Virus record (IMG/VR): IMGVR_UViG_3300028654_000001
Coordinates: 372,001-436,000 of that record
Strand: one strand, 5' to 3'
DNA length: 64,000 bases
Part shown: one piece after another, positions 20,737 to 50,707 of the stretch
How positions within the stretch are numbered: position 1 is the stretch's first letter
Layout: every line of letters starts with the position of its first letter
Notes under the pieces: generated by a model
Seen by the model: only the letters and a program-made list of their open reading frames with translations
The model's database searches: none
Told to the model about the DNA's origin: nothing
Made by a program: the position numbers and the translations under genes

Positions 20737-21588
20737 TCATTTACCCCTCTTGCGAGTGGGGATTGACCACTTTCTTGAGTGGCCAATAACAGCGGCAACG
20801 TGCTTACATACACGATTGATCCTAGTAGGATCTTTTATGTCAGGGGTCGAAGCGGTACCTACTGGCTTACCATCGAGGTACTGATCTTGCTTCGCGTGAT
20901 ACTCAGACCCAAGCCACCTCCAAGCTTTGCAAGAACAGGAAAATAAAACATCCATCCTCGCCAGAGCTGTGATATTACCCTTTCTAGCGGCTTTGAGCCG
21001 AACCATCTTGGGGCCATTCCCACAATCAACAGTAAAGATCCACCGAAGATTGGTAACGTCGACCCGCTTGACTCCAACAGAACAGGTACGAGCCTTGATT
21101 CGAACCTTTGGATTAAGTCCCTCTTCAATATCAGAAATCTTGGTAGCTACTCGAATTGGACTCTCGAGGGGAACCCTGACCTCGTGAGCAGTCCGAAGAA
21201 GATACAACTGCACCACGTCCTCGATGAGAGCCGCGTTATGGCGGTTAGGGATCCCATCTCTATAGGGGTAGTGGGTTTCGTTGTAGTCCTTGTCAATGCG
21301 AGGGCCTGGCCTGTTGTAAGTAGGCTTGGCTTCTGAGTGATCTATTTCGTCACCTTTACTCTGATCCTTCAGGAGATCGTCAGCATCATCAACCTTGTAC
21401 ATTGAAGAATCCTCAACGTTAGGTTGCCTGGCATCCTCCTCAGACGGTTTTGCAAAGGTGGACTCCCCAGGGATATCCGAGTCTAGGGACACACCTTTAT
21501 CCGAAGGCCCTGTTCCAGGGAGACCCGACTCCGCTACGGGAGTACCCCCAGCTGCATACGGGGGACGGAGCACCAGAGGTTGGTTCAT
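20737..21588 (-). CDS. SWIM-type zinc-finger protein
   Basis: FSCSCKAW...RVCKHVAAV. Confidence 0.75.
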   Translation of the reverse strand: MNQPLVLRPPYAAGGTPVAESGLPGTGPSDKGVSLDSDIPGESTFAKPSEEDARQPNVEDSSMYKVDDADDLLKDQSKGDEIDHSEAKPTYNRPGPRIDKDYNETHYPYRDGIPNRHNAALIEDVVQLYLLRTAHEVRVPLESPIRVATKISDIEEGLNPKVRIKARTCSVGVKRVDVTNLRWIFTVDCGNGPKMVRLKAARKGNITALARMDVLFSCSCKAWRWLGSEYHAKQDQYLDGKPVGTASTPDIKDPTRINRVCKHVAAVIGHSRKWSIPTRKRGK

Positions 21589-23192
21589 TCTTTTTCAGCT
21601 AGTTCCTGAGCTCTATCCTCAAGAGCACTCTTGAGCTTCTGATGGGCTGCACGAGTTTTGCTCTTCACAATCTTGGACAACTCATTGAGAGTCTTCTCAT
21701 CCTTGAAACAAGGGTCCCAATCCCCATCCCAGGTACCAACCCCAGCACCCTCAGCCTCCATGAAGTATAAGTACCCAGCACCACCTCTGAGTTCGGATAA
21801 CACCCCAACCACATCATCAGCATCAGTACAGCCCTTGAGGGGGCCTTTTTCAAGATCTAACTTGGACAGGTTTCCCTTCGCCCAGTCTTTCAGAACTCTC
21901 TCAACAGCATCATCGTAAGCACGAGCCGCACTCTTGATCTCTGAGTTCAACGTTGCCGATGATCGGTCAGATTCAATGTTCTCGAGCTCCATCTCCAAGA
22001 GACCCTCTAGCGTCTCTGCATCATTGATGGTGGAAGACTTGAGCATAGCCAGCCGAACATAGTGACGAGCTGTCTTCTCAGGCTTCAGCAGGTTACCTAT
22101 CTCAGAGGTGAGCCAGTTGACTACTTGCTCTGAGTAGTTCGATCTTGGGACTGGAATTGTCCCGTAAGGAGCATCCAGGGTTGCGATCCCAGAGGTTTCA
22201 TTAGAAGCAATGTTCAAGGTGAGTGCTGCCTTAACAGACTCTGTCGTGCCAGGAGGAGTAATCTCGAGGACAGTGTAATTCCCGTAGTCCCAACCCCGGG
22301 GCATAATGGTATCACTCTTGATAATCTTGACTTGAGTCCCCCTGCCAATACGAGTCTTCAACAACTTAATGTACTTAGCAGTGAGGGGTCTCGGGAGGTA
22401 CTCCCGATCCTTCACCAGGTAGTCATACCCGGCAGCTTCTTTGGCTATCGCCAATTGAACATAGTGGCGAGCAGTGAACCCAAACCCTAATTGAAGAGGG
22501 TTCTCCTCCTCCAACGCCTTAGGAATCTTAGGAGCCTTGAGGTTGTTCTTCGAGAGAACGTTGATTGCATCGGCCATCAACTTGCAACAATCTCGGAACT
22601 TCCCCAGCTTACTTGGACTTGTCAGACTATCCGGGAGATCTGACTCAACCCTATGGAACAGTCCTAGAGCTTCACTGATAGCTTCGGGGTCATCCTTCGG
22701 ACTCTTCTCTGAGTCGAACAGCTTGGCGAAGTCCTTGACAGCTTTTGTCAGTTCTGTCTCCCGAGTTACCTGTTCATTGATATCCAAGGTGTCTGCTAGG
22801 TAATCCAAACTCTTGTGAAGACTATTGTAGATGTCGTACACTACCGACATACTAACTGACTTCTTTTGCTCGAGTTCTTTCTCGAAGTCAGTATCGGACA
22901 CAAGAAGCTTCATACCTTTGACTTCAGCTTCAGCCTTGTCCCCTGCACGCTCCTTCTCGAGAGTCTTAACAACTTCCTCAATGTACTCCTTCTCATTCCT
23001 GAGAGACACCGTAACCGAGAAGATGGTGTCTCTCAGGTACTGAAGAGCAGTCTTTTCCCTTTTTACCACATCAAGGATCACTGGCTTTGATGGGATCTTA
23101 GCCGGAGCTTTCTTGGGAGCTCGCTTCCTTGCCGCCGCTGCTACGCGCTCGGCAAGGAGAATATCTTGAAAGTCACTGAGAAGGTTTGCCAT
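21585..23192 (-). CDS. Modular hypothetical protein (probable internal head protein)
   Basis: Start at ATG 23192; N-terminal ERVAAA motif; duplicated TARHYVxLA linker. Confidence 0.7.
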   Translation of the reverse strand: MANLLSDFQDILLAERVAAAARKRAPKKAPAKIPSKPVILDVVKREKTALQYLRDTIFSVTVSLRNEKEYIEEVVKTLEKERAGDKAEAEVKGMKLLVSDTDFEKELEQKKSVSMSVVYDIYNSLHKSLDYLADTLDINEQVTRETELTKAVKDFAKLFDSEKSPKDDPEAISEALGLFHRVESDLPDSLTSPSKLGKFRDCCKLMADAINVLSKNNLKAPKIPKALEEENPLQLGFGFTARHYVQLAIAKEAAGYDYLVKDREYLPRPLTAKYIKLLKTRIGRGTQVKIIKSDTIMPRGWDYGNYTVLEITPPGTTESVKAALTLNIASNETSGIATLDAPYGTIPVPRSNYSEQVVNWLTSEIGNLLKPEKTARHYVRLAMLKSSTINDAETLEGLLEMELENIESDRSSATLNSEIKSAARAYDDAVERVLKDWAKGNLSKLDLEKGPLKGCTDADDVVGVLSELRGGAGYLYFMEAEGAGVGTWDGDWDPCFKDEKTLNELSKIVKSKTRAAHQKLKSALEDRAQELAEKE

Positions 23193-23299
23193 AGTACCTG
23201 TTTCCAACTTTGGAGTCTATAACCAAGGAAAAGTCCTTAACGAACTCCCCAGTCACATTCATAGATACTCCCGATTACGAAGCGAGCCTGATGAGTCGC

Positions 23300-24187
23300 T
23301 TACTGATGTTTGTCTTTTACGACATCTTTGTTGGTTTCCCAATGATCGGCAATCTCATCGAGTTGATCCTTGGTCAGTGCTGGATTGGACTTCTTGAACC
23401 CATCAATTACATCCTGCCTGGTTGTTGCTTGGATCTGACCCATGGCCTCAACAGCTTCCTGAGCCGTCTGAGAGAGGGCCATTCGAACCATGCTCAGTCG
23501 ATAGCTGGCATCCTTGGGTGAGATTCGAGCTCCCTCGATCTCGTCAGCAATTCGACGAAGGGCTCCGGCAACGTGTGACTTAGAAGCTGCTTTGAACATT
23601 CGATGATTTCCTTGGTTTGAAGTAACAGATGACTTACGTCTGAGTTTTTTGAGAGCTGCCTCAGCATCCTCAAGAATAGAGTCAGCTACGCCTCGTTGAC
23701 TAGGTGGAATGCTCTTCTTCAACTCAATGGCTTTAGCTAGGATATCCTCGAGACTATCTTCCACCTTGTTGAAATCTTGAATGGTCAGAGCCGCAGCAGT
23801 CTTGGGTTGCTCTGGCCTTGGTTGAATAAAGGGGGATCTACGATCAATCTGCTTGATCCTGGTATCTCTTAGGACACCCTCCAACTCCTCCACCTTCTCA
23901 GGCTTGAGTTGCTCCTTCAGCTCTTCGTAATCAAGCCTGGATGCTGCAAGGGCCGTGGCCGCAAGAGCCTTATCTAGCTTGAATAGACTCTCTGGGATCC
24001 CATAAATGGTGTCTCCAGCCACCTCGTAGAAGTTATCCCGGTGCGGTGACATAGAGATCAACCGTACAGCTTGGCTGACGAAGTTCTTCAATTGCTCGCA
24101 ACGAAGGCGAGCATCCGTTAATTCCTCCATAATGTAGATTAACGCACCAGCTTCCTTGTTAGTGCTTGTAGGTTTGTCCGAGTCCAT
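23300..24187 (-). CDS. Hypothetical helical protein
   Basis: 295-aa ORF with KTAAA and KAAS motifs. Confidence 0.7.
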   Translation of the reverse strand: MDSDKPTSTNKEAGALIYIMEELTDARLRCEQLKNFVSQAVRLISMSPHRDNFYEVAGDTIYGIPESLFKLDKALAATALAASRLDYEELKEQLKPEKVEELEGVLRDTRIKQIDRRSPFIQPRPEQPKTAAALTIQDFNKVEDSLEDILAKAIELKKSIPPSQRGVADSILEDAEAALKKLRRKSSVTSNQGNHRMFKAASKSHVAGALRRIADEIEGARISPKDASYRLSMVRMALSQTAQEAVEAMGQIQATTRQDVIDGFKKSNPALTKDQLDEIADHWETNKDVVKDKHQ

Positions 24188-24219: not shown

Positions 24220-24963
24220 TCAAGAATCCTCTGGCCTAACCACTTTCTTGGATCTGGATCTTCGGTTAGCCTCACGGCGCCTAATCCTACGTAGAGCTTC
24301 CTCTGGAGAACACTGAGTGTCTCTTTCCAGCGCTTTTGTTGCTTGTACAGCCCTGCCTTTGGCAAGGGCTTCAGCATTCCCAGCTAGCCATACTGGATTA
24401 TCAGAACGACGTGCTATACCCTCTGAGTGCTTCAATCTAAATTCTGGATCCTTATGCAGTTTCTGGAGTGTTGCAGAGTTTTTCTCTTTCCACTCCTGGC
24501 TCTCATGCATACGTCGTAATTGCTCCAGGTTATTCCGCACCCACTCAGGATCACTCAACCTCTTTTTAGCACCCTCAAACTGTGCAGCCTTCCATGTAGA
24601 GGTGGAGGAAGACTTACGAACCGCGGCATCATGCCTCTCGCGTACAACTGGTTGAGAAGAATCATAACCTTCCCCACCAGCGCTCAGATTATACCCTTTT
24701 GGACTAAGAGAAGAATATGATCTTATGAGCCTAATCTCTGCATCAACTAGATCAGAACGAGACCCAATCACAGTTTCTAAGCACTCGATACTAAACTTGT
24801 CCGAACCATACTTCTTGATGGCCCTATACAAGGGATGGGTACTATCCTTCTTGGATGCCCAACGGTGTTGTCGCCACCGTTGGGCAATTGAGACAGAAGT
24901 TTGGCCAATGTACACCTTGCCGTTAACAGTGTTGGTAATACGGTAGATGTACCCGGCTATCAA
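24220..24963 (-). CDS. GIY-YIG homing endonuclease
   Basis: GYIYRITNTVNGKVYIGQT..R..H..E..GYNL; SD GAGGTGG. Confidence 0.9.
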   Translation of the reverse strand: MIAGYIYRITNTVNGKVYIGQTSVSIAQRWRQHRWASKKDSTHPLYRAIKKYGSDKFSIECLETVIGSRSDLVDAEIRLIRSYSSLSPKGYNLSAGGEGYDSSQPVVRERHDAAVRKSSSTSTWKAAQFEGAKKRLSDPEWVRNNLEQLRRMHESQEWKEKNSATLQKLHKDPEFRLKHSEGIARRSDNPVWLAGNAEALAKGRAVQATKALERDTQCSPEEALRRIRRREANRRSRSKKVVRPEDS

Positions 24964-24972: not shown

Positions 24973-26265
24973 TCAGGACTGGAAAGCCTCAGGGAACTCT
25001 TCTAGCAGTAATCGTTTGAAATCATCACTCTCAGAGGCGAAGATTGCACGAATCACCCCATAGTTTTTCTCGAACTTGAAGCGAATCAAGGCTAACCTAC
25101 GCTTCCAGTGATCATTGAAGTCATACTCGTCTGGGAACTCACTGCAAATCATCTTGGCAGTCATCCGACGAGCATCAGCCGTACCATCTCGCTCAATGTG
25201 TGAGGGCTGCTCTTCCGGATACTCCTCTTCTCGGCTTGGAGCTTGAGCTTTCTCAGGCTGTGCCACAGGGGTGACACCCGGGAAGGCCTTCTTTGGCCCG
25301 TTGGTGTTCCTGAAGGTCATGCCCTCAGCTTGAACGACCGATTGCTGTGGGACGCTATCCGACCCCGAGGCATCGAATATCTCCGTTCCACCACCGGTGG
25401 TGACCCCAACACTGACACCTTCCACAGTCTTAGGTTGAACTGCTGAAGCTATCCTAGCCACCTGACGCGGCTCAGAAGCTACCGTAGTTCTGGCCTTGGG
25501 CTCTTGACGCTTGGGTTGAGTCTGGTTGTTCACAGCCAGGTTAGTAGTCTGAGCCGGGGGTGGGACATAACCAACAAGTCTGGTTAGGACATCCGCTTTC
25601 CTAGCTTCCTTAGACGCCTGGTGAGCCTCTCTCTCATCCTCAGTCATCGCAGCTAGAAGTTGTTCTTCGGTGATCCCTTGACCAGGCTGAATCTTAACTT
25701 GGTTTGCCTGACTAATAGCAGCCCCAACAGTGTTAGGAGTTACCTGCAGAGCTGACTTGGCTGGCGTCTGAAGGATTCGATTGACCTCAACTCCAAATTC
25801 AGAACCACCCACATCTGGGGCATTACCGCGAGCCACAAAAGCCCCAGCCCTACCTTGTTGAGCCCTTGCCTGGATTGTCTGTTGTTGAGCTGCAGCAGTC
25901 CGCTCTCCGCGGTTCATAACTACACGCTCATCAGACTCAACAACGGCAGCTGCAACTCTCTTTGGAGGAGACAGAGGATTCTGACCTAGATCGTTGGCGG
26001 GCCGGAACCCTATGTTGGCTGAGATGTTTGGTGAGATCCCTGCTTCAGGATCATACTGATCCTCTAACACCATCCAACCAAGACGGACAGCTCCACGAAG
26101 AGTCGGTAAAACCATGCGGGAGCCGTTGAGTTCGGCGTTAGTACCATCAAACAGGATTTCCATCCCGTCTAGTACCTTTTGCCCCGAATTACCAAGCTCA
26201 AAGCTCTTGGTGGTTATGTATTTCTCCATCTGACCTGGTCTATATCTAATCTGATCGGTTGGCAT
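24973..26265 (-). CDS. Hypothetical protein (Ala/Gln/Pro-rich centre)
   Basis: 430-aa ORF with SD AGGAG. Confidence 0.75.
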   Translation of the reverse strand: MPTDQIRYRPGQMEKYITTKSFELGNSGQKVLDGMEILFDGTNAELNGSRMVLPTLRGAVRLGWMVLEDQYDPEAGISPNISANIGFRPANDLGQNPLSPPKRVAAAVVESDERVVMNRGERTAAAQQQTIQARAQQGRAGAFVARGNAPDVGGSEFGVEVNRILQTPAKSALQVTPNTVGAAISQANQVKIQPGQGITEEQLLAAMTEDEREAHQASKEARKADVLTRLVGYVPPPAQTTNLAVNNQTQPKRQEPKARTTVASEPRQVARIASAVQPKTVEGVSVGVTTGGGTEIFDASGSDSVPQQSVVQAEGMTFRNTNGPKKAFPGVTPVAQPEKAQAPSREEEYPEEQPSHIERDGTADARRMTAKMICSEFPDEYDFNDHWKRRLALIRFKFEKNYGVIRAIFASESDDFKRLLLEEFPEAFQS

Positions 26266-26323
26266 CTGATCTCCTATAAGGGGTGTTTACTTACCCGATA
26301 ACTATAGGAGTCCTATAAACAAG

Positions 26324-27088: not shown

Positions 27089-27442
27089 TTAGTCCTTTGC
27101 GGCCTTCTTGGTCGCCTTCTTGGTGGCTGGCTTCTCTACAGGAACAATCACGCCTGTATCGACCTTGATCGCCTTCAGGAAACGAGCCTTGAGCTTCTTC
27201 GAAGCAGGCTTCGCCGGCACAGTCATGGTAGCACCGGTTGCTGGGTTACGAGCGGTACGGGCTGCTTTGGGGCCAACCTTAACCAACACGAACTTGACCA
27301 CACCCGGAATCACGAACTTCTGTTCTTTCTTCAGGGTCTTGCCGGCAACTGTGACTAGAGCACCCAAAAAGGCCCGCACGTGGGTCTTGGTGGTGTTTTC
27401 CATTTCGGCTGAGATGGCATTGATGAGCTGAGTTTTCGTCAT
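27089..27442 (-). CDS. hup: HU family histone-like DNA-binding protein
   Basis: MTKTQLINAIS...IPGVVKF..KAARTARNPATG..VPAKPASKKLKARFLK; Lys/Ala tail; start at ATG 27442 after AGGAAG. Confidence 0.9.
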   Translation of the reverse strand: MTKTQLINAISAEMENTTKTHVRAFLGALVTVAGKTLKKEQKFVIPGVVKFVLVKVGPKAARTARNPATGATMTVPAKPASKKLKARFLKAIKVDTGVIVPVEKPATKKATKKAAKD

Positions 27443-31570: not shown

Positions 31571-32440
31571 TTATACGCGAGTTACCAGCAACCTGGTGAG
31601 ACCGCGGGGGTTGAAGGCCCCAATGCCGACGTTTTCGAAGCAAGAAAATCCTATTGTCCTTGCTTTTGGATCGTCAGCCGACAGAACCGTGAGCTCTGTA
31701 CGTACGGGGAATCTTCCAAAGTTCTCAGGTTCCGCTGCGATGTACACAAAACCAGCAGGAACCAAACGGCTCGTGATGATCTGTGCACCCCACAGGTTCG
31801 CCTGAAGACCGGTCTTCAGAAGAACGGCTTGGCTCTCGATGTCGAGGATGTCCCTACCGAACTTACGGATATCCGCATAGTCGGTAGCATTCATGTAGAT
31901 ACGAGCTACACGAAGGTCATGACGCTCTACCTCAGCAAAGGCATCTGCTAGGACGCTTGGAGAGATCGGGGCCACAACGTTGATGTCGGGGTTGGTCTGA
32001 GGCAGGGTGTCGAAGCCCGAGACAGCAATGCTGTCGAGAACTGCGAACACACGCTCATCTTCAGCAGCCTGGATCTGGGCTTTCGCCAAGTCCTGGGCAC
32101 GTTCGATGAGGTCGAACCTACGCTCTTTGATCTGGGTGAGGGGGATCTCAGGGTTCGAGGCAATCTCGAAGAGCGGGAAGATGACCCTACGGGGCTTCTG
32201 GATCGCGAGGATGTTTTCACCCTCTTCGCCGACCACATAAGCCGTAACGTCTGGATCTTTATCATAAATTGGCAGGGCCCCGTCTGGGAGTTGCTCTACC
32301 AAAAATGTTTTCCGCCCGACGGCCGTGTAGTCACGACGCAGCCTGAGGGGCTGAATCATGGAGGCAGCGAGCTTCGCACGGCCAGCAGCCGTTTTGATAT
32401 ACTCACTGATGATCTGTTGCTTTACTTCGTTTGATACCAT
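31571..32440 (-). CDS. Major capsid protein (HK97 fold)
   Basis: 289 aa; order protease-scaffold-decoration-MCP; V.EEGE..FEIASNPEI..ERAQDLAKAQIQAAED..DIRKF..LWGAQII pattern; strong codon bias and terminator. Confidence 0.85.
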   Translation of the reverse strand: MVSNEVKQQIISEYIKTAAGRAKLAASMIQPLRLRRDYTAVGRKTFLVEQLPDGALPIYDKDPDVTAYVVGEEGENILAIQKPRRVIFPLFEIASNPEIPLTQIKERRFDLIERAQDLAKAQIQAAEDERVFAVLDSIAVSGFDTLPQTNPDINVVAPISPSVLADAFAEVERHDLRVARIYMNATDYADIRKFGRDILDIESQAVLLKTGLQANLWGAQIITSRLVPAGFVYIAAEPENFGRFPVRTELTVLSADDPKARTIGFSCFENVGIGAFNPRGLTRLLVTRV

Positions 32441-33230: not shown

Positions 33231-34670
33231 TCACTGATTTGTGGGGATACCGAATGCATCCCTTACGTCAGGAGCCGAGCTCCAGAGCGAGGAGAGTTGA
33301 TCACCACCACTGCTGGCCACCTTGGCCGTGGAGGTTCCACCGATCCTGCTCACTCCCTGGCTGGGAACCGTGCCTACGGTCCTCATCGAGGCAGTTCGAA
33401 CTGCATGAGCTTGCTTCTGCTGCTGTTGGCCACCGTCCTGAGCCTGCTGAGCTTGCTCGGTCTCGGCATTGGCAAAGAGCTGCATGAGCATGTCATCTTC
33501 CGGGCCTAGTTGAACTTCGCCGACATCCATGGTGGGGGTGTCGAGTTCGATGTCCATGTTGGCCATGGGCTGAACCTGTTGCTGCTGGGCAAGCATCTGG
33601 TCGATGAGTTCACCATCGCTACCCTGTTGCTGAGCCTGACCCTGCTGGGCCTGACCCATGCAAGCTGCAGCCGCTGCAACTGGATCCTGGCCATTCTGAA
33701 TCGCCTGTTGCACTGCTTGTGCAACCTGCTGGGCCTGACTCTGTTGCTGCATCTGAGCTTGTTGCTGTTGCTGACCAGCTTGTTGACCACCCTGTTGCTG
33801 TGCAGGTGGGGCTTGTACTTGCTGAGCCTGAAGCTTATCAAGCTGTTGCTGAGCTTGCTGAATCATCTGAGCGAGCTGTTGCTGCATCTGAGCCTGTTGC
33901 TCCTGTCCAGCTTGTTTCTGCTCCTGTTGCTGAGCTTGCTGACCCTGTTGGTCTTGAGCCAAGAGAGCCCTCACCGAAGTGTGACGAGGATCAGAAAAGT
34001 TCTGAGAAGCCTGAACCTGTTGCTCCTGTTGCTCCTGTTGCTGGTCCTGCTGAGCCGCTTGCTTCTGCTCCTGTTGCTGCTGACCCTGCTCTTGCTGAGT
34101 CTGCTGAGCTTGCTTCTGCTGCTCCTGTTGCTGCTGACCCTGCTCTTGCTGAGCTTGCTTCTGCTGCTCCTGCTGACCCTGGTCCTGCTGAGCTTGCTGG
34201 GCAGCCTGAACCTGTTGCTCCTGTTGCTGGTCCTGCTTGGCAGCAAGACGAGTAAATGTCGACATTAGCTCTTCATCAGGTAGGTGCATGAAGGAGATCG
34301 ACTGCTCTTCGATATCCATTGAGGAGGCAGTCTTCGGGAGTACCGACCGAGCCAGGGCGACACACACGGCAGCCTTCTTGACAAGAACCTCTTCCGAGGC
34401 GGTCTTCTCAGGGTGGTTGAAGGTGTCGTTCCTCATCTCAGGCATCCCGATCTCATTCCTCTTGACCTGACCACCTGAGTACTCGGCTTCCCAAGTTCCG
34501 GCGGCTGGGTGAATGTCTTCGGCAAATGTCGAGGGGTCACCAATCACGTAGGCATCAGCCGCTGGCTGCTGTCGAACGTGGTCTTGGTTCATGGTGTACG
34601 GGTCAGCAACCTTAAGACCCGCCTCTTTGGCGATGTTGTTGATATTCCAGGTTGAACGCTCGCGGGTCAT
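33231..34670 (-). CDS. Gln-rich scaffolding/prohead core protein (putative)
   Basis: Lies between protease and MCP; long poly-Gln coiled region. Confidence 0.7.
   Translation of the reverse strand: MTRERSTWNINNIAKEAGLKVADPYTMNQDHVRQQPAADAYVIGDPSTFAEDIHPAAGTWEAEYSGGQVKRNEIGMPEMRNDTFNHPEKTASEEVLVKKAAVCVALARSVLPKTASSMDIEEQSISFMHLPDEELMSTFTRLAAKQDQQQEQQVQAAQQAQQDQGQQEQQKQAQQEQGQQQQEQQKQAQQTQQEQGQQQQEQKQAAQQDQQQEQQEQQVQASQNFSDPRHTSVRALLAQDQQGQQAQQQEQKQAGQEQQAQMQQQLAQMIQQAQQQLDKLQAQQVQAPPAQQQGGQQAGQQQQQAQMQQQSQAQQVAQAVQQAIQNGQDPVAAAAACMGQAQQGQAQQQGSDGELIDQMLAQQQQVQPMANMDIELDTPTMDVGEVQLGPEDDMLMQLFANAETEQAQQAQDGGQQQQKQAHAVRTASMRTVGTVPSQGVSRIGGTSTAKVASSGGDQLSSLWSSAPDVRDAFGIPTNQ
33590..34250 (-). repeat. 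CAG/CAA-rich low-complexity repeat (QQEQQKQA units)
   Basis: Repeated cagcagcaggagcagcagaagcaagct-type units. Confidence 0.85.
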
Positions 34671-34715: not shown

Positions 34716-36386
34716 TCATTGGATACCGAGGGAGAACAGTTCACCTTTTTCGATTAGTTGAGCTCTCTCGGAAACTATTGGGGTTCGGCCCATTACCTCA
34801 CTACAAGCAGTGAGGTAATCATCTACATTTGGATATGATCTCGTTCCGCCTACTGCGATAACGGTCTTGTAAATTCGAGTGTCGCCTGCTAGGGAAGACT
34901 TTTTAGTCGCCCTCTCCAGAAGTCGGCACATAACAAGAATCTCACGACCACTAAATCTTTTTGCTTGAGCCACGGCTTGCCACCCACCTACATCGTGGAG
35001 GATCAGCCCAGCCAACACACTTTTTGCAGCTCTTTCGTCTTTAACGTTAGCTGCCACCATCTTAGCTCTGTCGATCCACTTAGAATACTTCAGAGCTGAT
35101 TTGATGAGAGATTCATTTGAATGGTTTGGATCTAAGGTGGACTCATCCTTATCTTTATTGGAGTCCGCCAAGTTCTTCTTGACCTTCTTGGTAACCTCAT
35201 CAACGATAGCCCCGTATAGGTCGTCGATGGTCTTCTTAAAGGGGTTCTCCTTCTCAGAAGGTGTGCTCGGAGCTGTGTCCTTAAACTCAGACTCACCAGG
35301 GAAGTCTTGTTGTGCAGCCACAGGACCCCCACCGTTAATCTCAGTGAGCCTCTGCTCTAAAGCCTGAGCAGCTCGGTCACTACCAGAGAAGGCGGCAGGA
35401 GTTTTTAAGTATCCCAGAGAGGGACCATCATAGAGGTATGCCAGGTGATCCCCTGGGGTGGCCTTGACGTTGATTGACCGACGAGGGGTATTGAGTCGTG
35501 CAGCCTTCTGCATCGCATTGACGTCGAAGACCTCAACAGGACGGGAGAAGGCTACCTGGATCTTCTGCCTGGCGTTCTCAACCATCAAGGCTGTCTTCGG
35601 GTCTAAGATCTTATTAAGGACAGCGCCGACGAAGGCTGGGTTGGCAACCCAGGAGCCCTCGATGAACTTCACCGACCCAGGCTCTACCTTAACGTGTCCG
35701 CAGAGCTCGGCAATCTTCCGACGCTTACCACTCGCGTCAATGAACCATTGACCCTTCTCGTACTTGATGTGCCTGCAGAGCTGAGTCTCATCCTCGGCTA
35801 CGTTACCGCACTTGGTGCAGACCGTGAACGAGACATGACACCCCATAGAGAGTGTGCTGAGGGTCCCGTCTAAGATAGCTGCTATGAGTTCTCGGTGCTT
35901 CCTGTCAGTGGCAATCAGGATGTCTACGTAAACTGAATCCCCAATATCTCGAGCTGCGGCATCAATGATCTTGCCCTTGGAGAGTTCTGGGATCTGAATG
36001 TGTTCAACGTAGTTCTCACCACCTATAAACGTCCTGAAAGACGAAAGAAGTAACTTTCTCTCCCAAGCATCATTGTTGTTATTAATGTACTTGGTGGTGC
36101 CGGCAGTAATATAGAAGTCTGGGAACTTACGGTCGATCTGGACACCATCGAACATCTGCTTGCCAGTGGGTAGCCCCACTGGAGTCTCTGTGTCGACTGA
36201 GGCAATGATGGTGCAGTGCGAAAGTAGGTACTGAGTCGGGTCATACTGTTGGAGTACAACCTGAGAGGCTTTCCTAATCTCAAATGTAGGTGATGGTAGA
36301 CACGCCTTAGCACGGATGTCTTCCCAGACGGCTTGGTTGATAGTCGCGTTGGTGACTCGAGCTTTTGCGTACTTTGGGAAACCCAT
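34716..36386 (-). CDS. Prohead (capsid maturation) protease with Cys-rich insert
   Basis: YVEH...GKIIDA...LSMGC..CTKCG..LCRH..FIEGSWVANPAF fits HK97/herpes-type Ser protease motifs; position between portal and MCP. Confidence 0.75.
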   Translation of the reverse strand: MGFPKYAKARVTNATINQAVWEDIRAKACLPSPTFEIRKASQVVLQQYDPTQYLLSHCTIIASVDTETPVGLPTGKQMFDGVQIDRKFPDFYITAGTTKYINNNNDAWERKLLLSSFRTFIGGENYVEHIQIPELSKGKIIDAAARDIGDSVYVDILIATDRKHRELIAAILDGTLSTLSMGCHVSFTVCTKCGNVAEDETQLCRHIKYEKGQWFIDASGKRRKIAELCGHVKVEPGSVKFIEGSWVANPAFVGAVLNKILDPKTALMVENARQKIQVAFSRPVEVFDVNAMQKAARLNTPRRSINVKATPGDHLAYLYDGPSLGYLKTPAAFSGSDRAAQALEQRLTEINGGGPVAAQQDFPGESEFKDTAPSTPSEKENPFKKTIDDLYGAIVDEVTKKVKKNLADSNKDKDESTLDPNHSNESLIKSALKYSKWIDRAKMVAANVKDERAAKSVLAGLILHDVGGWQAVAQAKRFSGREILVMCRLLERATKKSSLAGDTRIYKTVIAVGGTRSYPNVDDYLTACSEVMGRTPIVSERAQLIEKGELFSLGIQ

Positions 36387-42860: not shown

Positions 42861-43906
42861 TAGAGGGTTTCCTGCTTCTGCTTCCGCCCTGGCATCTGCG
42901 CCCATGCTGTGACGATCTTTTGAAGAAGCTCATTATTCAAAATGTCCCCGTTCATGAACTTCTCCCAAGACCCACCACAGGCTCGGAACACAACCCTCAT
43001 TGACTTAAAGTCAATGTCTTCCGTAATAGTGTTCTCTCCGATCATGTGATCGATCAGTTGTCGAATGATTCGATTTGAGAATACTAGAGGGGGCTGTTGA
43101 TCTGGGTCTAATCCAGCTGCCTTCTCATTGAACTTTTCTATGACAGACCCGTCCTTCATGTAGGACTCTTCCAAAGCCGGGACCAAGTATTGGCTACGGA
43201 GAGTAGATGCTTCATGCCCTACTGCTTCGGCTGCTCCCTCAAGAGCCTCCTTGAACTCACCCTTGAGGATCTTGTCTCGCTCCTTACGGTCATGCGGTAG
43301 CTTTACCCCTTTAGAGCGAAGAGCCCTCAACCTCTCCTGCATCTCTCGATTAGCGTGGAGCCCTCGTAAGTCTTTAGCTGTGATGTTGAAGGAGGCTAAA
43401 TACTCATTTACCTCCTTCGAACTAACGTCGTCAAAGAGCCCCCCACTAGACTTCTCAACTGAATCGTAGGCTGCCTTCAATGCTGGAAGGATCTTAGGGT
43501 CATCAACAACCTTCTCGTGTTTGACTCCTGACTTTCCTGTGTATTTGATAGTAGCTTTTCCCTTACCAATAGAGACATGTTGCTTCTGCCACCCAGTAAC
43601 TCCGAAGTGACCCCTCTCCTCAGCGGACTCGTCATTTCCTACCCTCTCGTAGGTATGGTCAATCAATGCCACCACAAGAGCCGTCAACTTAGTCTTCTGG
43701 TTACTCGAACTTAGATCAGAGTTGACCTTCTTACGAAGACTGTCCAGAGACTTACGAAGCTTCTCGATTCGGTCAGCCTTCTGATTATTCCTACGGGATA
43801 CCTGTTGGTCTGAGTACTCATACACAACGGTTCCAGTGTCCAAGACCTTCTTGTTCTTGTACCGAGCCGCTACACGTAGAGAGATCTCATCCAAGGGGAA
43901 AATCAT
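42860..43906 (-). CDS. DNA topoisomerase IB (poxvirus/bacterial type) with C-terminal extra domain
   Basis: Catalytic pentad in order: ERVGN, GKSG, KDLR, VGH, SQY. Confidence 0.85.
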   Translation of the reverse strand: MIFPLDEISLRVAARYKNKKVLDTGTVVYEYSDQQVSRRNNQKADRIEKLRKSLDSLRKKVNSDLSSSNQKTKLTALVVALIDHTYERVGNDESAEERGHFGVTGWQKQHVSIGKGKATIKYTGKSGVKHEKVVDDPKILPALKAAYDSVEKSSGGLFDDVSSKEVNEYLASFNITAKDLRGLHANREMQERLRALRSKGVKLPHDRKERDKILKGEFKEALEGAAEAVGHEASTLRSQYLVPALEESYMKDGSVIEKFNEKAAGLDPDQQPPLVFSNRIIRQLIDHMIGENTITEDIDFKSMRVVFRACGGSWEKFMNGDILNNELLQKIVTAWAQMPGRKQKQETL

Positions 43907-46511: not shown

Positions 46512-46904
46512 TTACCTATTGACAGACTTTGTTCCACCACCGCCGCCTGTCTCTATTAGGTATTGAGACAGGTTGCGAACTGTCGCGTAACCCTTGTCCT
46601 TTGGGATCTGGTTCTCGATTGCGTTACTAAGATCCTTGCCAGTCTCAGCTAAGTTGAGAACCCCGGTCTGGTCTGGCTTTGGGAAGAAAACATCTTTAGG
46701 ACGTAGGTCGCGACGATCTGGGTCGATAGTGTCTTCATGGTCAGAATTCATTTCCTGACCGTATTCCTTGAGGACTCCTCTACTAATCCCTTTCGGGTTG
46801 TTGAGAGGTTTGACAAGATCCTTCACGTCTTTCCGCATACCAGGAGGTTGATCCGCTTGAAGGAACCTGGCGGCCACACGAAGGGTTAGGATGTCGTCTC
46901 TCAC
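46512..46904 (-). CDS. Hypothetical protein with N-terminal RVAARF motif
   Basis: 130-aa ORF coupled to its neighbours. Confidence 0.7.
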   Translation of the reverse strand: MRDDILTLRVAARFLQADQPPGMRKDVKDLVKPLNNPKGISRGVLKEYGQEMNSDHEDTIDPDRRDLRPKDVFFPKPDQTGVLNLAETGKDLSNAIENQIPKDKGYATVRNLSQYLIETGGGGGTKSVNR

Positions 46905-48937
46905 AGGTCTACCTTTGCCCTGCCCATCTGAACCGATACCTTCTCTGGCTTCACCGGTTCTGGGTTGAGATCAATGTTCATCGAGGTCATAGCGTACTCC
47001 GCCACGATCGAGTGAGATGGAATCATAAGGCTCTGGAGGTCATGCTCAGTTGAGTCACCAGATGCCAGGATCTCCCTCTGCATTGCCGTCTTGTCTGCAT
47101 AAGGGGGATCCACTACCAACGGCTTTGCATACTTCGAGCAAGTCCCCGGAACGGCCTGATGAATACAACTCGAGCACTTCGGGCCAATCTTAACATAAGG
47201 GACCTGTCGAGCTCTATGAAGCCTACCACCCTCCTCACACCCACGAGAATAGTCCTCATAGACTGTTGGATCGATGAAGAAGATCCCTTGAAGACCCTGT
47301 TCAGCGAGTGTAGTCTTGAGCAAGTCAGTAGCTGCCCTAATGTCTGTATTGGCAAACTTGGACTTGAGGAGACCTAGAAGCTGTCTTCCGTAGAGACCCT
47401 CATTCATGTATCGAGAAGCAGTCTTCAGGATCTCGTGGTTCAAGATATCCCGCTTGGTCAGGTCTTTGGCTTCCTTATCGTACTTGTACCCGTTGAATTC
47501 TTGCTCAATATAAGCTCGAAGCGGGGTGTTGGCCTTCTTAGGAGTAGTAGCTGTCCTGTAAATAGCCTTGATAGCTTCAGCAGGCGTTGCACCCCAAGCC
47601 ACCTTGTCAGATCCTGTCTCTAGGTTGCCAGCCTGACGATGCTCCCATAGGAGGGCGTTGACCGTCTCTTGTGTATACAGGTCCTCAGCCTTGGCAACCA
47701 ACCGCTTGCCATACATCATGCACCGAGCCACCTTATTGTAGAGGCACCCAGGGCACCTCCCACCAGCCACAATCCCTTTAATGGATGGGTTGTGCTTAGC
47801 AAGGAAATCGGCTCCCGTATGACAATCATCAAAGGTCTCTTGCGTTGAGTAGGTGGTCCCGAAGTAACCGGCCTCTTTGAAGACGGGCTCCCAAGTTGGC
47901 CTGGTTGCTTTCAGATCATCCAAGGAAAAGGATAGTTTAAGGGACTGCAACAGTTCCTGTTCTCCATGGCCCTTGAGCATCTCCCTACGCAGGAAGGCGG
48001 ATATATCGAATGCCTTCAAGTTCATAGCACTCTTGTTCACTGAGGCGGTCCGACCTGTGGCTACTTCTGGACTCCACGCTAAGTGTTCGTTGACAAGTCC
48101 CTGAGCTTGAGCAGAGATGATCGGTAGATGAACCTTCGGTGGTTCTACAGTAGCCTTAAGGAACTGTAGTGGGTTGACAACTGGCTTCTGCATCTCAGCA
48201 GAATCAGCAACCTTCACATCATCCGCCAAGAGGGCTCGCTTGATCCTACTTCGAGGATCTTCACTCGAGGCTTGAACAATCTGCTTACCCCTAGCGGATT
48301 GATTCCGCTCAACAGCATCTGCGAGAGCTTGGGTGTAGGGTACCTCGAGAACTATCTCTTTCTGAAAAACAGCACAATTCTGGCTAGATCCATGAATGCA
48401 ACCCAGACATCGATCTTTGGCTACAACGAACCTAGAGTCTTGAGCATACCTCTTAACGAAGTCAACCGTTTGACGGCTTGCTTGATGACAAGTGGGGAAG
48501 TCCTCCGAGTCAACGTATAACTTACCTAGAAGCCCGCGCTCAGCTACCACCTGAGTCAGGATCTGACGTGAGGCTACCAGAGTGTCCCGATCAAACCTTG
48601 ACGTCAATTCACCCTTGAACTTCTCAAGGTCAGTCGATTGCATAAGAGCCAACCGAGCCACTTTGATCACCCTCTGAAGGATATCCTCAGATGATAACTT
48701 CCCATGAGCCTGACTAAGATCACCCATGGTCCGAGGGGATTCCTTATTAGGAACCAAATAGGTGGATGGGCTCTTGTCCTCATGACTCCACAACGCCTGC
48801 ATATCAGGAGCTATATCTAGGTTTTGCTTCGGAAGAGTATCCAACTCACGATACTGCTTCTCATCCACATCGAGCCAATCGAGGTTGGCGACGGAGCCTT
48901 CTTTGATGAAACTGGAGATGTCGCCTAGCTCAGCCAT
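46901..48937 (-). CDS. Hypothetical protein with three repeated 4-Cys metal-binding domains
   Basis: Three E.G..G..(Y/F)..C..C..C..C..(Y/F).K.LV modules. Confidence 0.8.
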   Translation of the reverse strand: MAELGDISSFIKEGSVANLDWLDVDEKQYRELDTLPKQNLDIAPDMQALWSHEDKSPSTYLVPNKESPRTMGDLSQAHGKLSSEDILQRVIKVARLALMQSTDLEKFKGELTSRFDRDTLVASRQILTQVVAERGLLGKLYVDSEDFPTCHQASRQTVDFVKRYAQDSRFVVAKDRCLGCIHGSSQNCAVFQKEIVLEVPYTQALADAVERNQSARGKQIVQASSEDPRSRIKRALLADDVKVADSAEMQKPVVNPLQFLKATVEPPKVHLPIISAQAQGLVNEHLAWSPEVATGRTASVNKSAMNLKAFDISAFLRREMLKGHGEQELLQSLKLSFSLDDLKATRPTWEPVFKEAGYFGTTYSTQETFDDCHTGADFLAKHNPSIKGIVAGGRCPGCLYNKVARCMMYGKRLVAKAEDLYTQETVNALLWEHRQAGNLETGSDKVAWGATPAEAIKAIYRTATTPKKANTPLRAYIEQEFNGYKYDKEAKDLTKRDILNHEILKTASRYMNEGLYGRQLLGLLKSKFANTDIRAATDLLKTTLAEQGLQGIFFIDPTVYEDYSRGCEEGGRLHRARQVPYVKIGPKCSSCIHQAVPGTCSKYAKPLVVDPPYADKTAMQREILASGDSTEHDLQSLMIPSHSIVAEYAMTSMNIDLNPEPVKPEKVSVQMGRAKVDL

Positions 48938-50423
48938 TATAGTCTTCCCTGTAGAGATCTTGCTGATCGTTACGGTAATTATGAGTAGTGTAGTCGTACT
49001 TTATGTACGGAACCTCACCCTGCTCCATCCGATAGTCTGTGTTTGGTGAGATATCACGGTCATAGTTGTAGTTCGAGTCATCTCCAGGCATCTGGGAATC
49101 CGCAAACATGAACTCATCGTTGTGAGAGGGTCGCGGGGTAAGTGGGGCATCCTTACCGGGTGGGCTTCCTTGGGGCATCGTTGACTGCCCGAAGAGGCTC
49201 ACGTTGAATTGGTTTCCCTTGTCCCCCTCGTAGTAGTCCGACCGGGATACTCCGTCGGGGCCATCAAAAGGGAGGTCTGAACTCGCGTAGTTCGTCCAAA
49301 AGTCACTCGGAGACAGGGTGTCTTGGTAAGGTCCAGCACCCGGGTTTGGATCCTTGGTATTCGCTCCAGGATCATCAGGTAACTCACTCTGCGGACCCCA
49401 AACACCCCTACCATCTGGGTTTTTAGTTCCGTACCCTTCAGATCCCTGACCTTTGGCCCCATATCCGAGCCCAAAGTCATTGGCTTCAGTTGGGGTATCG
49501 TCATCACTGGGCATTGAGGACTCGCCCCAAACCTCACCAGTGGAATTTCTACTGAGTTGATTATCAAACCAAGAGGGGTAGTTGTACTCACTACCAACCC
49601 CATCGGTCTTGCCCCAGTCATCATCAACTGGCGGGTCATCCTCGTTGTAAGATCCACCGGGACCAGTTTGCTCCCCACGGTCTAAGTGATCTACCCGTGG
49701 CCCAGGAAGTGAACAAGGTGCAACAGACGAGTTAGCGTATTTTAATCTAGCACAAGGGGCTTTCCAATCCGAAGCCTCCTTTGTCTTGTAGGTCTCACCA
49801 GGGGGTTTAGCCTCATTAGTTTCGGGATCACTTCCTTGAGGGACTTGAGAAGCTCCAGTATCCTTCTTCTCATCCTTGATTTGATCCTTCATTTGCTTAG
49901 TCTTGGGTGGACTCTTCTTCTCGACCTCTTCCACCTCATCGTCCCCATAGCGCTCAGGATCCTCTAGGACTTCGTCAGCCTCATCAATGAGTTCTTCTAC
50001 GTCCGAAGCATCGGCATCATCTAGAATCGAGATCTGAGGTCTCCAGTGAGGCGCGTGAATCTCATCGTGAAGGGTGTCCGTGAGTGAGGAGAGGGTCTCA
50101 CAAGCCTCTTGGAGTCGTGACCTAACCTCCTTGACTTTGAGAACGTACCCCTTCCCGCCTAGCATACCATCAGGGGAGATGTCTGAGGACTTGAGCCTAG
50201 CGAATTCCTTGTAGGCTGTTAGGGTGTGACCTAAGGCTACCGAAGTCGAGAACAACGTTCTGGCTAATGGTTTGAGAGCCTTTAGGTCGAAGTCATGGTT
50301 CTTAGGGATCTCACGCTTTCCACCCTCACCCATAGGGGGAGGAACCGGAGGAGTTTTGGGAGGAGAGAGAGGAAGACCTTCTTCCCTCGCAATAACGATT
50401 CTAACCTTTTCACTAGAGTTCAA
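48930..50423 (-). CDS. Acidic, Gly/Pro/Asp-rich hypothetical protein (probable internal head protein)
   Basis: ~500-aa ORF; likely TTG start at 50423 after GGAGG. Confidence 0.75.
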   Translation of the reverse strand: MNSSEKVRIVIAREEGLPLSPPKTPPVPPPMGEGGKREIPKNHDFDLKALKPLARTLFSTSVALGHTLTAYKEFARLKSSDISPDGMLGGKGYVLKVKEVRSRLQEACETLSSLTDTLHDEIHAPHWRPQISILDDADASDVEELIDEADEVLEDPERYGDDEVEEVEKKSPPKTKQMKDQIKDEKKDTGASQVPQGSDPETNEAKPPGETYKTKEASDWKAPCARLKYANSSVAPCSLPGPRVDHLDRGEQTGPGGSYNEDDPPVDDDWGKTDGVGSEYNYPSWFDNQLSRNSTGEVWGESSMPSDDDTPTEANDFGLGYGAKGQGSEGYGTKNPDGRGVWGPQSELPDDPGANTKDPNPGAGPYQDTLSPSDFWTNYASSDLPFDGPDGVSRSDYYEGDKGNQFNVSLFGQSTMPQGSPPGKDAPLTPRPSHNDEFMFADSQMPGDDSNYNYDRDISPNTDYRMEQGEVPYIKYDYTTHNYRNDQQDLYREDYNG

Positions 50424-50434
50424 GAGGCCTCCGA

Positions 50435-50707
50435 TCAAACTTTGAGTGGTGACCCGTTGTCGTCGAACATCCGCTCCACGTACATACCGCCACTGGGCTC
50501 ACGTCTGATTGACCACAGGTCTCTTTCCGCCTTATGGATCAGCTCGTCATTTGATAACCGAATGAACGGACTCAGATCTCGGATGGAGGCTACTCTTACT
50601 CGATGAGGGGTAGGGGTAACCATCTCGGGCTCTCTCTTGAAGAAGGCGTCAAGCCCTGTTGAGCCTTGAACCTCAAAACCACTCAAATCAAAGTTACGGT
50701 TAGACAT
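50435..50707 (-). CDS. Small hypothetical protein
   Basis: ~90 aa; contains an RVRVAS motif. Confidence 0.65.
   Translation of the reverse strand: MSNRNFDLSGFEVQGSTGLDAFFKREPEMVTPTPHRVRVASIRDLSPFIRLSNDELIHKAERDLWSIRREPSGGMYVERMFDDNGSPLKV

What the first reader, a model, noticed from the sequence alone, without database searches (positions are those of the whole stretch)
20737..50707. Recurrent RVAAR(Y/F) and K/R-x-A(A/S) motifs: candidate capsid-targeting and maturation signals
Unrelated proteins start with near-identical motifs: TopIB LRVAARY (43859-43876), 46512-46904 LRVAARF (46863-46880), and 21585-23192 ERVAAA. K/R-x-A(A/S) recurs at domain boundaries in MCP (KTAA), scaffold (KTAS, RTAS, KVAS), 23300 (KTAA), 36389 (KSAA), 46901 (RTAS), TopIB (KAAG) and the 1-1385 protein. 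By analogy with T4 capsid-targeting sequences and gp21 processing, these may mark proteins packaged in the head and cut by the prohead protease.
Basis: partly seen in the sequence, partly recalled or inferred. Interest (0 to 1): 0.6.

Follow-up and report, generated by a model that had tools for sequence, protein, structure and literature searches.

The report
N-terminal address tag on megaphage proteins
About thirty unrelated proteins of a 512-kb uncultivated phage start with the same short helical peptide, most likely an address label that loads enzymes into the virus head; neither loading nor cutting has been tested.

Summary
The window lies in a complete 512,571-bp phage genome.

**The tag**
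- A profile search of the whole genome finds 30 copies in 29 reading frames: about 26 N-terminal, 3 C-terminal, 1 unclear.
- The consensus is (M)x[DE]ΦxΦΦxRV[AV]xR[YFVW]xxA, with the Arg usually 6-10 residues after the start codon.
- The proteins behind the tag are unrelated to each other.
- The conserved residues use many synonymous codons.
- Conservation follows α-helical periodicity.
- Orthologues in related 240-530-kb phages keep the tag.
- Carriers include TopIB, a DRAT-like ADP-ribosyltransferase, five HExxH proteins and a J-domain protein.

**The short pattern**
- K/R-x-A-(A/S) carries little information but is enriched in the head module: 33 observed against 15 expected.
- The excess is driven by [KR][TV]A[AS].
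- [KR]TA[AS] flanks the variable middle of 51 scaffold orthologues.

**The protease**
- The 34716-36386 protein has the T4 gp21/herpesvirus assemblin fold (Z 9.0).

**Verdict**
- A T4-CTS-like capsid-targeting tag is the best reading, at about 0.5 confidence.
- Packaging, the receptor and cleavage are all untested. One complex prediction gave no answer.
- This is a new variant of a known kind.

The parts
43835..43900 (-). N-terminal tag of the TopIB protein (gene 42860-43906); core RVAARY at 43859-43876
   Evidence: Pfam PF01028 matches residues 38-235 at 4e-27. The tag is kept in TopIB orthologues of the TerL loci, where the locus reaches the TopIB gene.
46839..46904 (-). N-terminal tag of the conserved 130-aa protein (gene 46512-46904); core RVAARF at 46863-46880
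   Evidence: Best profile hit, 23.9 bits. Orthologues in 13 distinct loci keep the core: RV[AV][AR]R[FY] in 12 of the 13, KVAARY in L028.
23106..23171 (-). Weaker N-terminal tag (core RVAAAA, 23130-23147) of the 540-aa protein 21585-23207
   Evidence: 11.6 bits against 8.3 for the reversed control. The orthologue in L048 keeps it.
47390..47440 (-). Internal tag-like copy (core KTASRY) in the 678-aa protein 46901-48937
   Evidence: The segment is conserved through all 17 aligned orthologue rows (16 loci). The KTAS core itself varies, appearing also as KQAS, KAAS and RATT.
33231..34670 (-). Gln-rich scaffold protein. Carries KTAS at 34395-34406 and 34323-34334, RTAS at 33387-33398 and KVAS at 33312-33323, flanking the variable middle.
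   Evidence: 7 [KR]xA[AS] sites against 0.8 expected. KTA[AS] near residue 89 and RTA[AS] about 55 residues from the C-terminus are kept in nearly all of 51 unique orthologues.
34716..36386 (-). Prohead protease with the gp21/assemblin fold and an inserted zinc ribbon. Carries RKAS at 36264-36275 in a low-confidence N-terminal stretch.
   Evidence: phrog_18299 at 2.5e-12. tblastn matches to annotated prohead proteases. AF2 model with pLDDT 71.7. Z 9.0, rmsd 3.3 Å over 127 residues to T4 gp21, 5jbl.
31571..32440 (-). HK97-type major capsid protein; KTAA at 32384-32395 in the N-arm
   Evidence: phrog_2522 at 3e-52 and PF05065. 77-98% identity across the clade.
23792..23803 (-). KTAA in the 295-aa protein 23300-24187, in a variable linker
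   Evidence: P[KR]xA[AGT] is kept in orthologues although the flanks vary.
25891..25959 (-). RVAA (25948-25959) and RTAA (25891-25902) in the 430-aa protein 24973-26265
48041..48052 (-). RTAS in the 678-aa protein 46901-48937
   Evidence: G[KR]x-A[SAGQ] is kept in a variable stretch in orthologues.
990..1001 (-). KTAA in the protein that runs off the window start (3-1385)

Best explanation
The shared peptide is an amphipathic α-helical address tag of about 17 residues: (M)x[DE]ΦxΦΦxRV[AV]xR[YFVW]xxA.

**Proposed mechanism (inferred)**
- The phage places the tag at the N-terminus, rarely the C-terminus, of about 30 otherwise unrelated proteins.
- One face of the helix docks on a component of the assembling procapsid: the scaffold core, the inner face of the highly conserved capsid protein, or the protease.
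- The tagged enzymes are thereby enclosed in the head and delivered with the DNA.
- This parallels T4 capsid targeting sequences on the internal proteins and Alt.

**Relation to the short pattern (possible, not shown)**
- The short core [KR][VT]A[AS] recurs in scaffold, protease, capsid protein and other head-module proteins.
- It may be the same recognition element in reduced form, or the site where the gp21-fold protease trims these proteins.

**Shown here**
- The tag exists.
- Its position is N-terminal.
- It is selected at the peptide level.
- It has helical character.
- It is conserved across the clade.
- The core is enriched in the head module.
- The protease has the gp21/assemblin fold.

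**Inferred only**
- Encapsidation, the receptor, and any cleavage.
For: **The tag is real, N-terminal and selected as a peptide**
- 30 profile hits of 7 bits or more against 8.3 bits for the reversed control.
- 22 of 30 are bounded by an upstream stop within 31 codons (P 8e-12).
- The distance from start codon to Arg is most often 8.
- The conserved R, V and A positions use many synonymous codons.
- The proteins behind the tag are unrelated: 3 weak pairs among 29.
- Conservation peaks at a period of 100-110° (permutation P 0.034), and the hydrophobic moment is 0.44 against 0.25 for random segments.

**The tag is conserved across the clade**
- It is kept in orthologues of the 130-aa protein and of TopIB at 45-78% TerL identity.
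- A variant with the same RVA[AS] core is N-terminal in G004, where TerL is 45% identical.
- Five relatives give 3-13 matches each.

**The carriers look like injected enzymes**
- DRAT-like ADP-ribosyltransferase at 1e-10, a J domain, TopIB, and five HExxH proteins.

**Link to the head**
- [KR]xA[AS] is 2.2-fold over expectation in the head region, and 9 of 24 [KR]TA[AS] sites lie there.
- The sites flanking the scaffold middle are conserved in 51 orthologues.
- The protease has the gp21 fold, Z 9.0.
- An upstream element [ACT]TTATAG is shared by 6 carriers and by the head-module gene 24973-26265 (Fisher P 6e-5).
- T4 precedent: PMC9026906.
Against: - There is no proteomic, structural or expression evidence for packaging.
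- Tag carriers are not enriched in the head module: 3 of 30 lie in 6% of the genome.
- The complex prediction with capsid protein, scaffold ends and tag gave no answer, which is neither support nor refutation.
- Phage proteases of this fold that have been characterised cut after Glu, and the tag has no conserved Glu site.
- Position 12, the residue after the proposed cut, is variable: A, R, S, E, K, G or H.
- The isolated relative Tunturi_5 (capsid protein 48% identical) lacks the tag.
- A J-domain protein and metallopeptidases could equally act in the cytoplasm.
Confidence: 0.5

Rival explanations
1. The tag is a docking helix for a hub other than the capsid. Candidates are a phage-built replication or assembly compartment, a multi-enzyme complex, or a phage or host chaperone, so the tagged enzymes would be gathered inside the infected cell rather than packaged.
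For: - Carriers are scattered through regions of small, mixed-strand genes far from the head module.
- One carrier is a J-domain protein.
- The one-sided helical conservation says only that there is a common binding partner.
- The tag sits at a domain junction inside a HAD-TopIB fusion in LR745208.1, where it cannot act as a free N-terminus.
Against: - No tubulin gene is found in the genome.
- The capsid protein is not of the nucleus-forming phiKZ type; that phiKZ-group capsid proteins differ is my own knowledge, while the HK97 assignment rests.
- Tag copies and the short core occur in several head-module proteins.
- The ADP-ribosyltransferase and TopIB have packaged counterparts in T4 and in poxviruses; the T4 Alt part is in PMC9026906, the poxvirus part is my own knowledge.
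Confidence: 0.25
2. The tag is a recognition signal for timed degradation or chaperone handling, that is a degron or a chaperone-binding N-terminus. It would control the level or folding of a set of phage proteins.
For: - The strict N-terminal position, with the Arg 6-10 residues from the start.
- In T4 the N-terminus of the capsid protein directs proteins to GroEL, as cited in PMC10052503.
Against: - C-terminal and internal copies exist.
- The tag is strictly kept on a small protein that sits next to the terminase genes throughout the clade.
- No dedicated unfoldase was looked for or found.
Confidence: 0.1
3. The short K/R-x-A-(A/S) pattern is unrelated to the tag and to proteolysis. It would reflect Ala- and Lys-rich helices and conserved structural segments of head proteins.
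For: - The pattern carries few bits and is also 1.3-fold over expectation outside the head region.
- Several instances lie in conserved folded segments, such as 36389 KSAA and the capsid N-arm, which Tunturi_5 keeps as KSAA.
- TerL KTAS is not conserved.
- Scaffold KKAA, RLAA and KQAA look compositional.
Against: - [KR]TA[AS] is 2.2-2.7-fold enriched in two genomes, with varied codons.
- 9 of 24 sites lie in 6% of the proteome.
- Sites are kept in otherwise variable linkers in 23300 and at 46901 site 296.
- Sites lie at the borders of the variable scaffold middle in 51 orthologues.
- Near residue 120-130 of its 23300 orthologue, LR745208.1 carries a full tag-like RVAKRF, close to where the window protein has KTAA at residue 129. 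The two were not aligned across this stretch, so positional correspondence is unverified.
Confidence: 0.35
4. The recurrence is chance, a DNA-level repeat, or shared ancestry of the carrier genes.
For: None beyond two weakly related carrier pairs and one clear pair.
Against: - P 1.2e-9 for the exact hexamer and P 8e-12 for N-terminal placement.
- Synonymous codons vary at every conserved position.
- 26 of 29 carrier bodies have no detectable similarity to any other.
Confidence: 0.02

Closest known systems
T4 capsid targeting sequences (CTS) on internal proteins IPI-III and Alt, removed by gp21
   Same: - A short N-terminal peptide is shared by unrelated proteins; the T4 propeptides are 10-19 residues (PMC9026906).
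- One carrier is an ADP-ribosyltransferase.
- A gp21-fold protease is encoded in the head module.
   Different: - The sequence is unrelated.
- There are about 30 carriers rather than a handful.
- Conservation extends past the proposed cut and is helical.
- There is no Glu-type cleavage site.
- Some copies are C-terminal or internal.
- Targeting and cleavage are untested.
Encapsulin cargo-loading peptides
   Same: A short conserved terminal peptide addresses diverse enzymes to the inside of an HK97-fold shell. The shell protein here is small (289 aa) and highly conserved.
   Different: By my own knowledge, encapsulin peptides are mostly C-terminal, extended and rich in Gly, Ser and Leu, and encapsulins have no portal or terminase. 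Here the peptide is an N-terminal Arg-containing helix in a tailed phage.
Bacterial microcompartment encapsulation peptides
   Same: An N-terminal amphipathic helix of about 18 residues on unrelated enzymes (my own knowledge); helical periodicity was shown here.
   Different: No microcompartment shell genes were looked for, and the context here is a phage head module.
Propeptides of giant phages phiKZ, 201phi2-1 and SPN3US, cut at A-X-E
   Same: Large heads with many internal and ejected proteins, processed by a gp21-like protease (PMC10052503).
   Different: In those phages the propeptides are mostly long (111-254 residues) and share only the cleavage motif, not a common tag. The clade here is different, with a small HK97-type capsid protein.
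Herpesvirus assemblin sites, (V/L/I)-X-A↓S
   Same: The protease fold is the same (Z 6-8 to several assemblins), and the candidate site here also has Ala followed by Ser or Ala.
   Different: The assemblin specificity is recalled from my own knowledge. No cleavage was tested here.

Membership tests
T4-type capsid targeting sequence system | Short N-terminal peptide shared by otherwise unrelated head-internal proteins | tested here: met
   About 26 N-terminal copies on unrelated proteins. Whether these proteins are head-internal is not known.
T4-type capsid targeting sequence system | The peptide is necessary and sufficient for incorporation into the prohead | not testable with these tools
   This needs fusion and assembly experiments. 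The complex prediction gave no answer.
T4-type capsid targeting sequence system | The peptide ends in a prohead-protease site and is removed at maturation | tested here: inconclusive
   No conserved Glu site follows the tag. The RVA[AS] core resembles the head-enriched [KR][TV]A[AS], but the residue after it varies.
T4-type capsid targeting sequence system | A gp21-type prohead protease is encoded with the head genes | tested here: met
   phrog_18299, annotated relatives, and Z 9.0 to 5jbl.
Encapsulin cargo-loading peptide | C-terminal extended peptide binding a portal-less HK97-fold nanocompartment | tested here: not met
   The tag is N-terminal and helical. Portal and terminase are present.
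gp21 / assemblin prohead protease (gene 34716-36386) | Assemblin-like fold of the catalytic core | tested here: met
   Model pLDDT is 71.7, with the core at 80-95. T4 gp21 gives Z 9.0, rmsd 3.3 Å over 127 of 164 residues, followed by herpesvirus proteases at Z 6-8.
gp21 / assemblin prohead protease (gene 34716-36386) | Conserved catalytic Ser and His | tested here: inconclusive
   H57, H129, S136, H164 and nearly invariant S180 are conserved over 68 sequences. They were not mapped onto the gp21 active site.
Type IB topoisomerase (gene 42860-43906) | Match to the catalytic-core profile above the curated cut-off | tested here: met
   PF01028 at 95.4 bits against a cut-off of 23.7, residues 38-235.
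Twin-arginine (Tat) signal peptide | Invariant RR followed by a hydrophobic stretch | tested here: not met
   Position 12 is Arg in only 7 of 28 copies, and no hydrophobic stretch follows.

The most novel reading that the evidence does not exclude
The tag is a clade-wide protein-addressing code of soil megaphages. One face of a 17-residue helix would direct about 30 unrelated enzymes per genome to a single phage-built receptor that is not the T4-type scaffold core. That receptor could be the inner face of the unusually conserved capsid protein, as in encapsulin loading inside a tailed-phage head, or a so far unknown intracellular structure. If so, the cargo list of an uncultivated phage clade could be read from sequence, and the tag could load foreign proteins.
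Probability: 0.2. Interest if true: 0.85.

Novelty: new variant of a known kind. Interest (0 to 1): 0.66.

Why it matters
- Phages of 400-600 kb are known almost only from metagenomes, and what their large heads carry besides DNA is unknown.
- A sequence tag that marks about 30 proteins per genome gives a testable list of candidate packaged or co-localised effectors: an ADP-ribosyltransferase, TopIB, HExxH peptidases and a J-domain protein.
- The clade is widespread. The capsid protein has 2031 homologues at E ≤ 1e-5, on contigs up to 620 kb.
- The tag gives a simple handle for experiments: tag-GFP loading, and protease assays.
- It would be an independent example of the CTS / cargo-peptide principle in tailed phages.

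Tried and rejected
**Searches that found nothing**
- Megablast of the head region against 50,697 phage records: no match.
- Sequence and profile searches of the protease against the PDB: blank.
- PHROG and NCBIfam scans of the carriers: almost nothing. One carrier, L024, matched two PHROG families of unknown function, and NCBIfam gave only sub-cutoff HExxH and DnaJ matches.
- Literature search for a described tag of this kind: nothing relevant.

**Predictions that failed or gave no answer**
- First AF2 model of the protease, from 11 sequences: unusable, pLDDT 33.6. It was replaced by a 68-sequence alignment.
- Complex prediction with capsid protein, scaffold N-end, scaffold C-end and the first 45 residues of the 130-aa protein: no answer, ipSAE 0.10 and 0.08 against a mark of 0.32. 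This is not evidence either way.

**Relatives checked for the tag**
- Tunturi_5: one weak hit in a 50-aa frame.
- LR745208.1: one or two hits. The tool's first-look filter is insensitive for a 22-position model, since it found 3 in G004 where direct scanning shows 10 or more.

**Explanations ruled out**
- Pro/Gly-rich linker after the helix: not found, 0.137 against 0.128.
- DNA-level repeat: rejected.
- Paralogy of the carriers: rejected.
- Tat signal: rejected.

**Procedural notes**
It was redone from coordinates.
- The large representative-protein search and the reads tools were not used.
- No alternative genetic code was needed.

Full report
**Context.** The window is bases 372,001-436,000 of a 512,571-bp IMG/VR virus record with direct terminal repeats, rated 100% complete. 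Bases 20-51 kb of the window hold a head and packaging module on the minus strand:
- terminase large subunit, 43906-45894
- TopIB, 42860-43906 (PF01028, 4e-27)
- portal, 38943-40766
- a 556-aa protease, 34716-36386
- a Gln-rich scaffold, 33231-34670
- a 210-aa protein
- an HK97-type capsid protein, 31571-32440 (phrog_2522, 3e-52)

The clade is large. 2031 capsid homologues score E ≤ 1e-5, the best 120 are at least 85% identical, and their contigs reach 620 kb. Related contigs of 240-530 kb were fetched.

**Observation 1: the RVAAR(Y/F) motif.**
- Genome-wide, RVAAR[YF] occurs four times against 0.013 expected (P 1.2e-9). Every copy lies at residues 9-16 of its protein.
- I built a profile from these copies and iterated it on the six-frame translation. 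It returns 30 hits of 7 bits or more in 29 reading frames, 27 of them above 9 bits. The best hit on the reversed database scores 8.3 bits.
- In 22 of the 30 hits the conserved Arg lies within 31 codons of an in-frame stop, so the motif must be N-terminal (P 8e-12).
- The distance from the nearest start codon to the Arg is 6-10 residues in most copies, most often 8.
- Three copies are C-terminal and two proteins carry a copy at both ends.
- The consensus is (M)x[DE]ΦxΦΦxRV[AV]xR[YFVW]xxA. Val10 is invariant in 28 aligned copies.

**What kind of signal it is.**
- The conserved Arg, Val and Ala positions use all their synonymous codons. Selection therefore acts on the peptide, not on a DNA or mRNA element.
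- With the tag removed, the 29 carrier proteins show only three similarities among themselves. The tag is not a by-product of gene families.
- Column conservation has a clear period of 100-110° (permutation P 0.034). The mean hydrophobic moment is 0.44 against 0.25 for random 15-mers.
- The conserved residues therefore line one face of an amphipathic α-helix. That is the signature of a docking peptide.

**Conservation in relatives.**
- In the 18 terminase loci (TerL 45-78% identical), the small protein upstream of the terminase genes keeps the core across 13 distinct loci. It is RV[AV][AR]R[FY] in 12 of them and KVAARY in L028. TopIB keeps RVAARY followed by a Lys-rich stretch.
- Other tagged frames appear around the capsid gene in relatives. 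In several of them a large protein next to the portal gene has an internal copy near residue 75-85.
- A profile search of five complete or large relatives gave 13, 8, 7, 3 and 4 matches.
- I fetched the most distant relative, G004 (393 kb; TerL 45% and capsid protein 77% identical), and scanned it directly. At least ten reading frames there begin with a variant, M-x-Φ-Φ-R-I-A-x-RVA-[AS]-[RK], so the core RVA[AS] is what stays constant.
- The isolated Acidobacteriota myovirus Tunturi_5 (309 kb) has the same order of protease, scaffold-like gene, small gene and capsid gene, and a capsid protein 48% identical. It shows no tag, and its paper has no virion proteomics (PMC11924767).

**The carriers.**
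- Apart from TopIB, they include a DRAT-like ADP-ribosyltransferase (1e-10), a J-domain protein (1e-7), and five proteins with an HExxH signature. Three of those five have weak zincin matches.
- The rest have no known family.
- They are spread over the genome, with clusters at 135-139, 169, 273-282 and 466-473 kb.
- Only three lie in the head module, so the tag itself is not a head-module feature.

**Observation 2: K/R-x-A-(A/S).** The pattern is short, so I tested it against per-protein shuffles.
- The finding region has 33 hits against 15.05 expected (z 4.7). The rest of the genome has 208 against 159. The densities are 3.40 and 1.42 per 1000 residues.
- Val and Thr at the x position carry the excess.
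- [KR]TA[AS] occurs 24 times against 10.7 expected, and 9 of the 24 fall in the finding region, which holds 6% of the proteome.
- G004 shows 23 against 8.6, again with several in its head module.
- Codons vary at these sites.
- In 51 unique scaffold orthologues (N-domain 42-96% identical), KTA[AS] near residue 89 and RTA[AS] about 55 residues from the C-terminus are nearly universal. They border the variable Gln-, Glu- or Lys-rich middle.
- In the 23300 protein and at site 296 of the 46901 protein, a [KR]xA[small] element is kept inside otherwise variable stretches.

TopIB KAAG does not fit the pattern, and 36389 KSAA lies in a conserved folded segment.

**Are the two motifs one?** Three observations suggest a link:
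- The constant part of the tag across the clade is RVA[AS], which fits [KR][VT]A[AS].
- Site 505 of the 46901 protein is a conserved internal copy that reads KTASR[YF] in most orthologues, a hybrid of both motifs.
- Near residue 120-130 of its 23300 orthologue, LR745208.1 carries a tag-like RVAKRF, close to where the window protein has KTAA at residue 129. The two were not aligned across this stretch.

Against a simple identity, [KR]TA[AS] is not N-terminally enriched, and the residue after RVA in the tag is variable.

**The protease.**
- Pfam and PDB sequence searches were blank.
- The profile phrog_18299 (head maturation protease, 2.5e-12) supports the assignment. So do tblastn matches to annotated prohead proteases: Tunturi_5 gp331 at 6e-46, Rhodococcus phage E3 gp77 at 9e-18, and Erwinia and Dickeya jumbo phages at 2e-5 to 3e-4.
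- An AF2 model from 68 sequences (pLDDT 71.7, core 80-95) aligns best to T4 gp21 (5jbl, Z 9.0, rmsd 3.3 Å, 127 residues). Herpesvirus assemblins follow at Z 6-8.
- Residues 1-46, which hold a conserved R-x-A-[SA] at residues 38-41, are of low confidence.
- Known phage enzymes of this fold cut after Glu (A-X-E in SPN3US, PMC10052503). Assemblins cut Ala↓Ser (my own knowledge).
- The fold therefore allows the proposed specificity but does not predict it.

**Interpretation.** I read the tag as an address helix that recruits diverse proteins to one partner.
- The best-supported partner is the assembling procapsid, by analogy with T4. There, 10-19-residue N-terminal propeptides target the internal proteins and Alt to the scaffold core and are then removed by gp21 (PMC9026906).
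- The ADP-ribosyltransferase carrier, the TopIB carrier (poxviruses package theirs, my own knowledge), the tagged small protein beside the terminase genes, and the tag-like copies in head-module proteins all fit this reading.
- Six carriers share an upstream element with a head-module gene, which fits weakly.
- Packaging, receptor and cleavage are inferences. I put 0.5 on capsid targeting, 0.25 on docking to another hub, and about 0.3 on [KR][TV]A[AS] being the protease site.
- One complex prediction (capsid protein, both scaffold ends, tag) returned no answer and counts for nothing.

**Novelty.** I found no description of this tag in the searchable literature. The principle is known from the T4 CTS, encapsulin cargo peptides and microcompartment encapsulation peptides. 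What is new is the sequence, the number of carriers and the clade, so I rate it a new variant of a known kind.

Noticed in passing
window 26266-26335, and upstream of carrier genes elsewhere in the genome (e.g. genome 3466, 135753, 193890, 461943, 470439, 471453, 503642): A promoter-like element [ACT]TTATAG(G) lies 11-14 nt before the start codon of several tag carriers, with three copies upstream of gene 24973-26265. Six of the 15 genes that have it are carriers (Fisher P 6e-5). The word is under-represented genome-wide (97 against 188 expected).
   Followed up: partly
window 31571-32440: The capsid protein is far more conserved than its neighbours. Against G004 it is 77% identical, where terminase is 45%, portal 48%, protease 34% and the scaffold N-domain 37%. 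The 80 loci kept from the viral-contig scan are at least 91% identical.
   Followed up: partly
window 42860-43906; L043 about 12097; L147 10626-12210: TopIB has different architectures across the clade. Here its catalytic core is fused to a C-terminal module of about 70 aa. In G004 that module is a free-standing 91-aa protein ending in an RVAS motif, and no TopIB match is seen next to the terminase gene. In LR745208.1 TopIB follows an additional N-terminal region of about 190 residues, HAD-like by eye and not scanned, with the tag at the junction.
   Followed up: partly
window 24220-24963, 28110-30416, 30517-31485, 37117-37809, 61254-63350: Homing-endonuclease-like genes interrupt the head module. 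Tool matches are LAGLIDADG fused to a DNA methylase (28110-30416) and LAGLIDADG_3 with a metallophosphatase domain (61254-63350). 30517-31485 was not scanned; its similarity to the LAGLIDADG-methylase-like frame of LR745208.1 suggests the same family. GIY-YIG-like and HNH-like sequences at 24220-24963 and 37117-37809 were judged by eye only. In two relatives (L036, L041) the terminase reading frame is about 1100 aa, suggesting an insertion or fusion.
   Followed up: no
window 41273-42905: Three tandem paralogues of 172-193 aa lie between TopIB and the portal gene. LR745208.1 has a single copy elsewhere in its head region. No family match.
   Followed up: no
window 12456-16217 (+) and 17275-19560 (-): A 1253-aa protein with four GT2 glycosyltransferase stretches lies on the opposite strand. 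Next to it is a 761-aa protein with collagen triple-helix repeats and EPTP repeats, with near-identical internal DNA repeats.
   Followed up: no
genome-wide; examples: Most start codons, including those of head genes, lack a clear Shine-Dalgarno sequence, and GTG and TTG starts are common.
   Followed up: no
L146 (Tunturi_5) 19986-22533: In the isolated relative Tunturi_5, [KR][TV]A[AS] sites lie near both ends of the protease (KTAA at 34, KVAS at 266 of 288) and of the scaffold-like gp332 (RVAA at 23, KVAS at 517 of 535). This phage could be used to test cleavage experimentally.
   Followed up: partly
window 27089-27484: A small basic protein inside the head region looks like an HU/IHF-type DNA-binding protein by eye. 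It was not tested with any tool.
   Followed up: no
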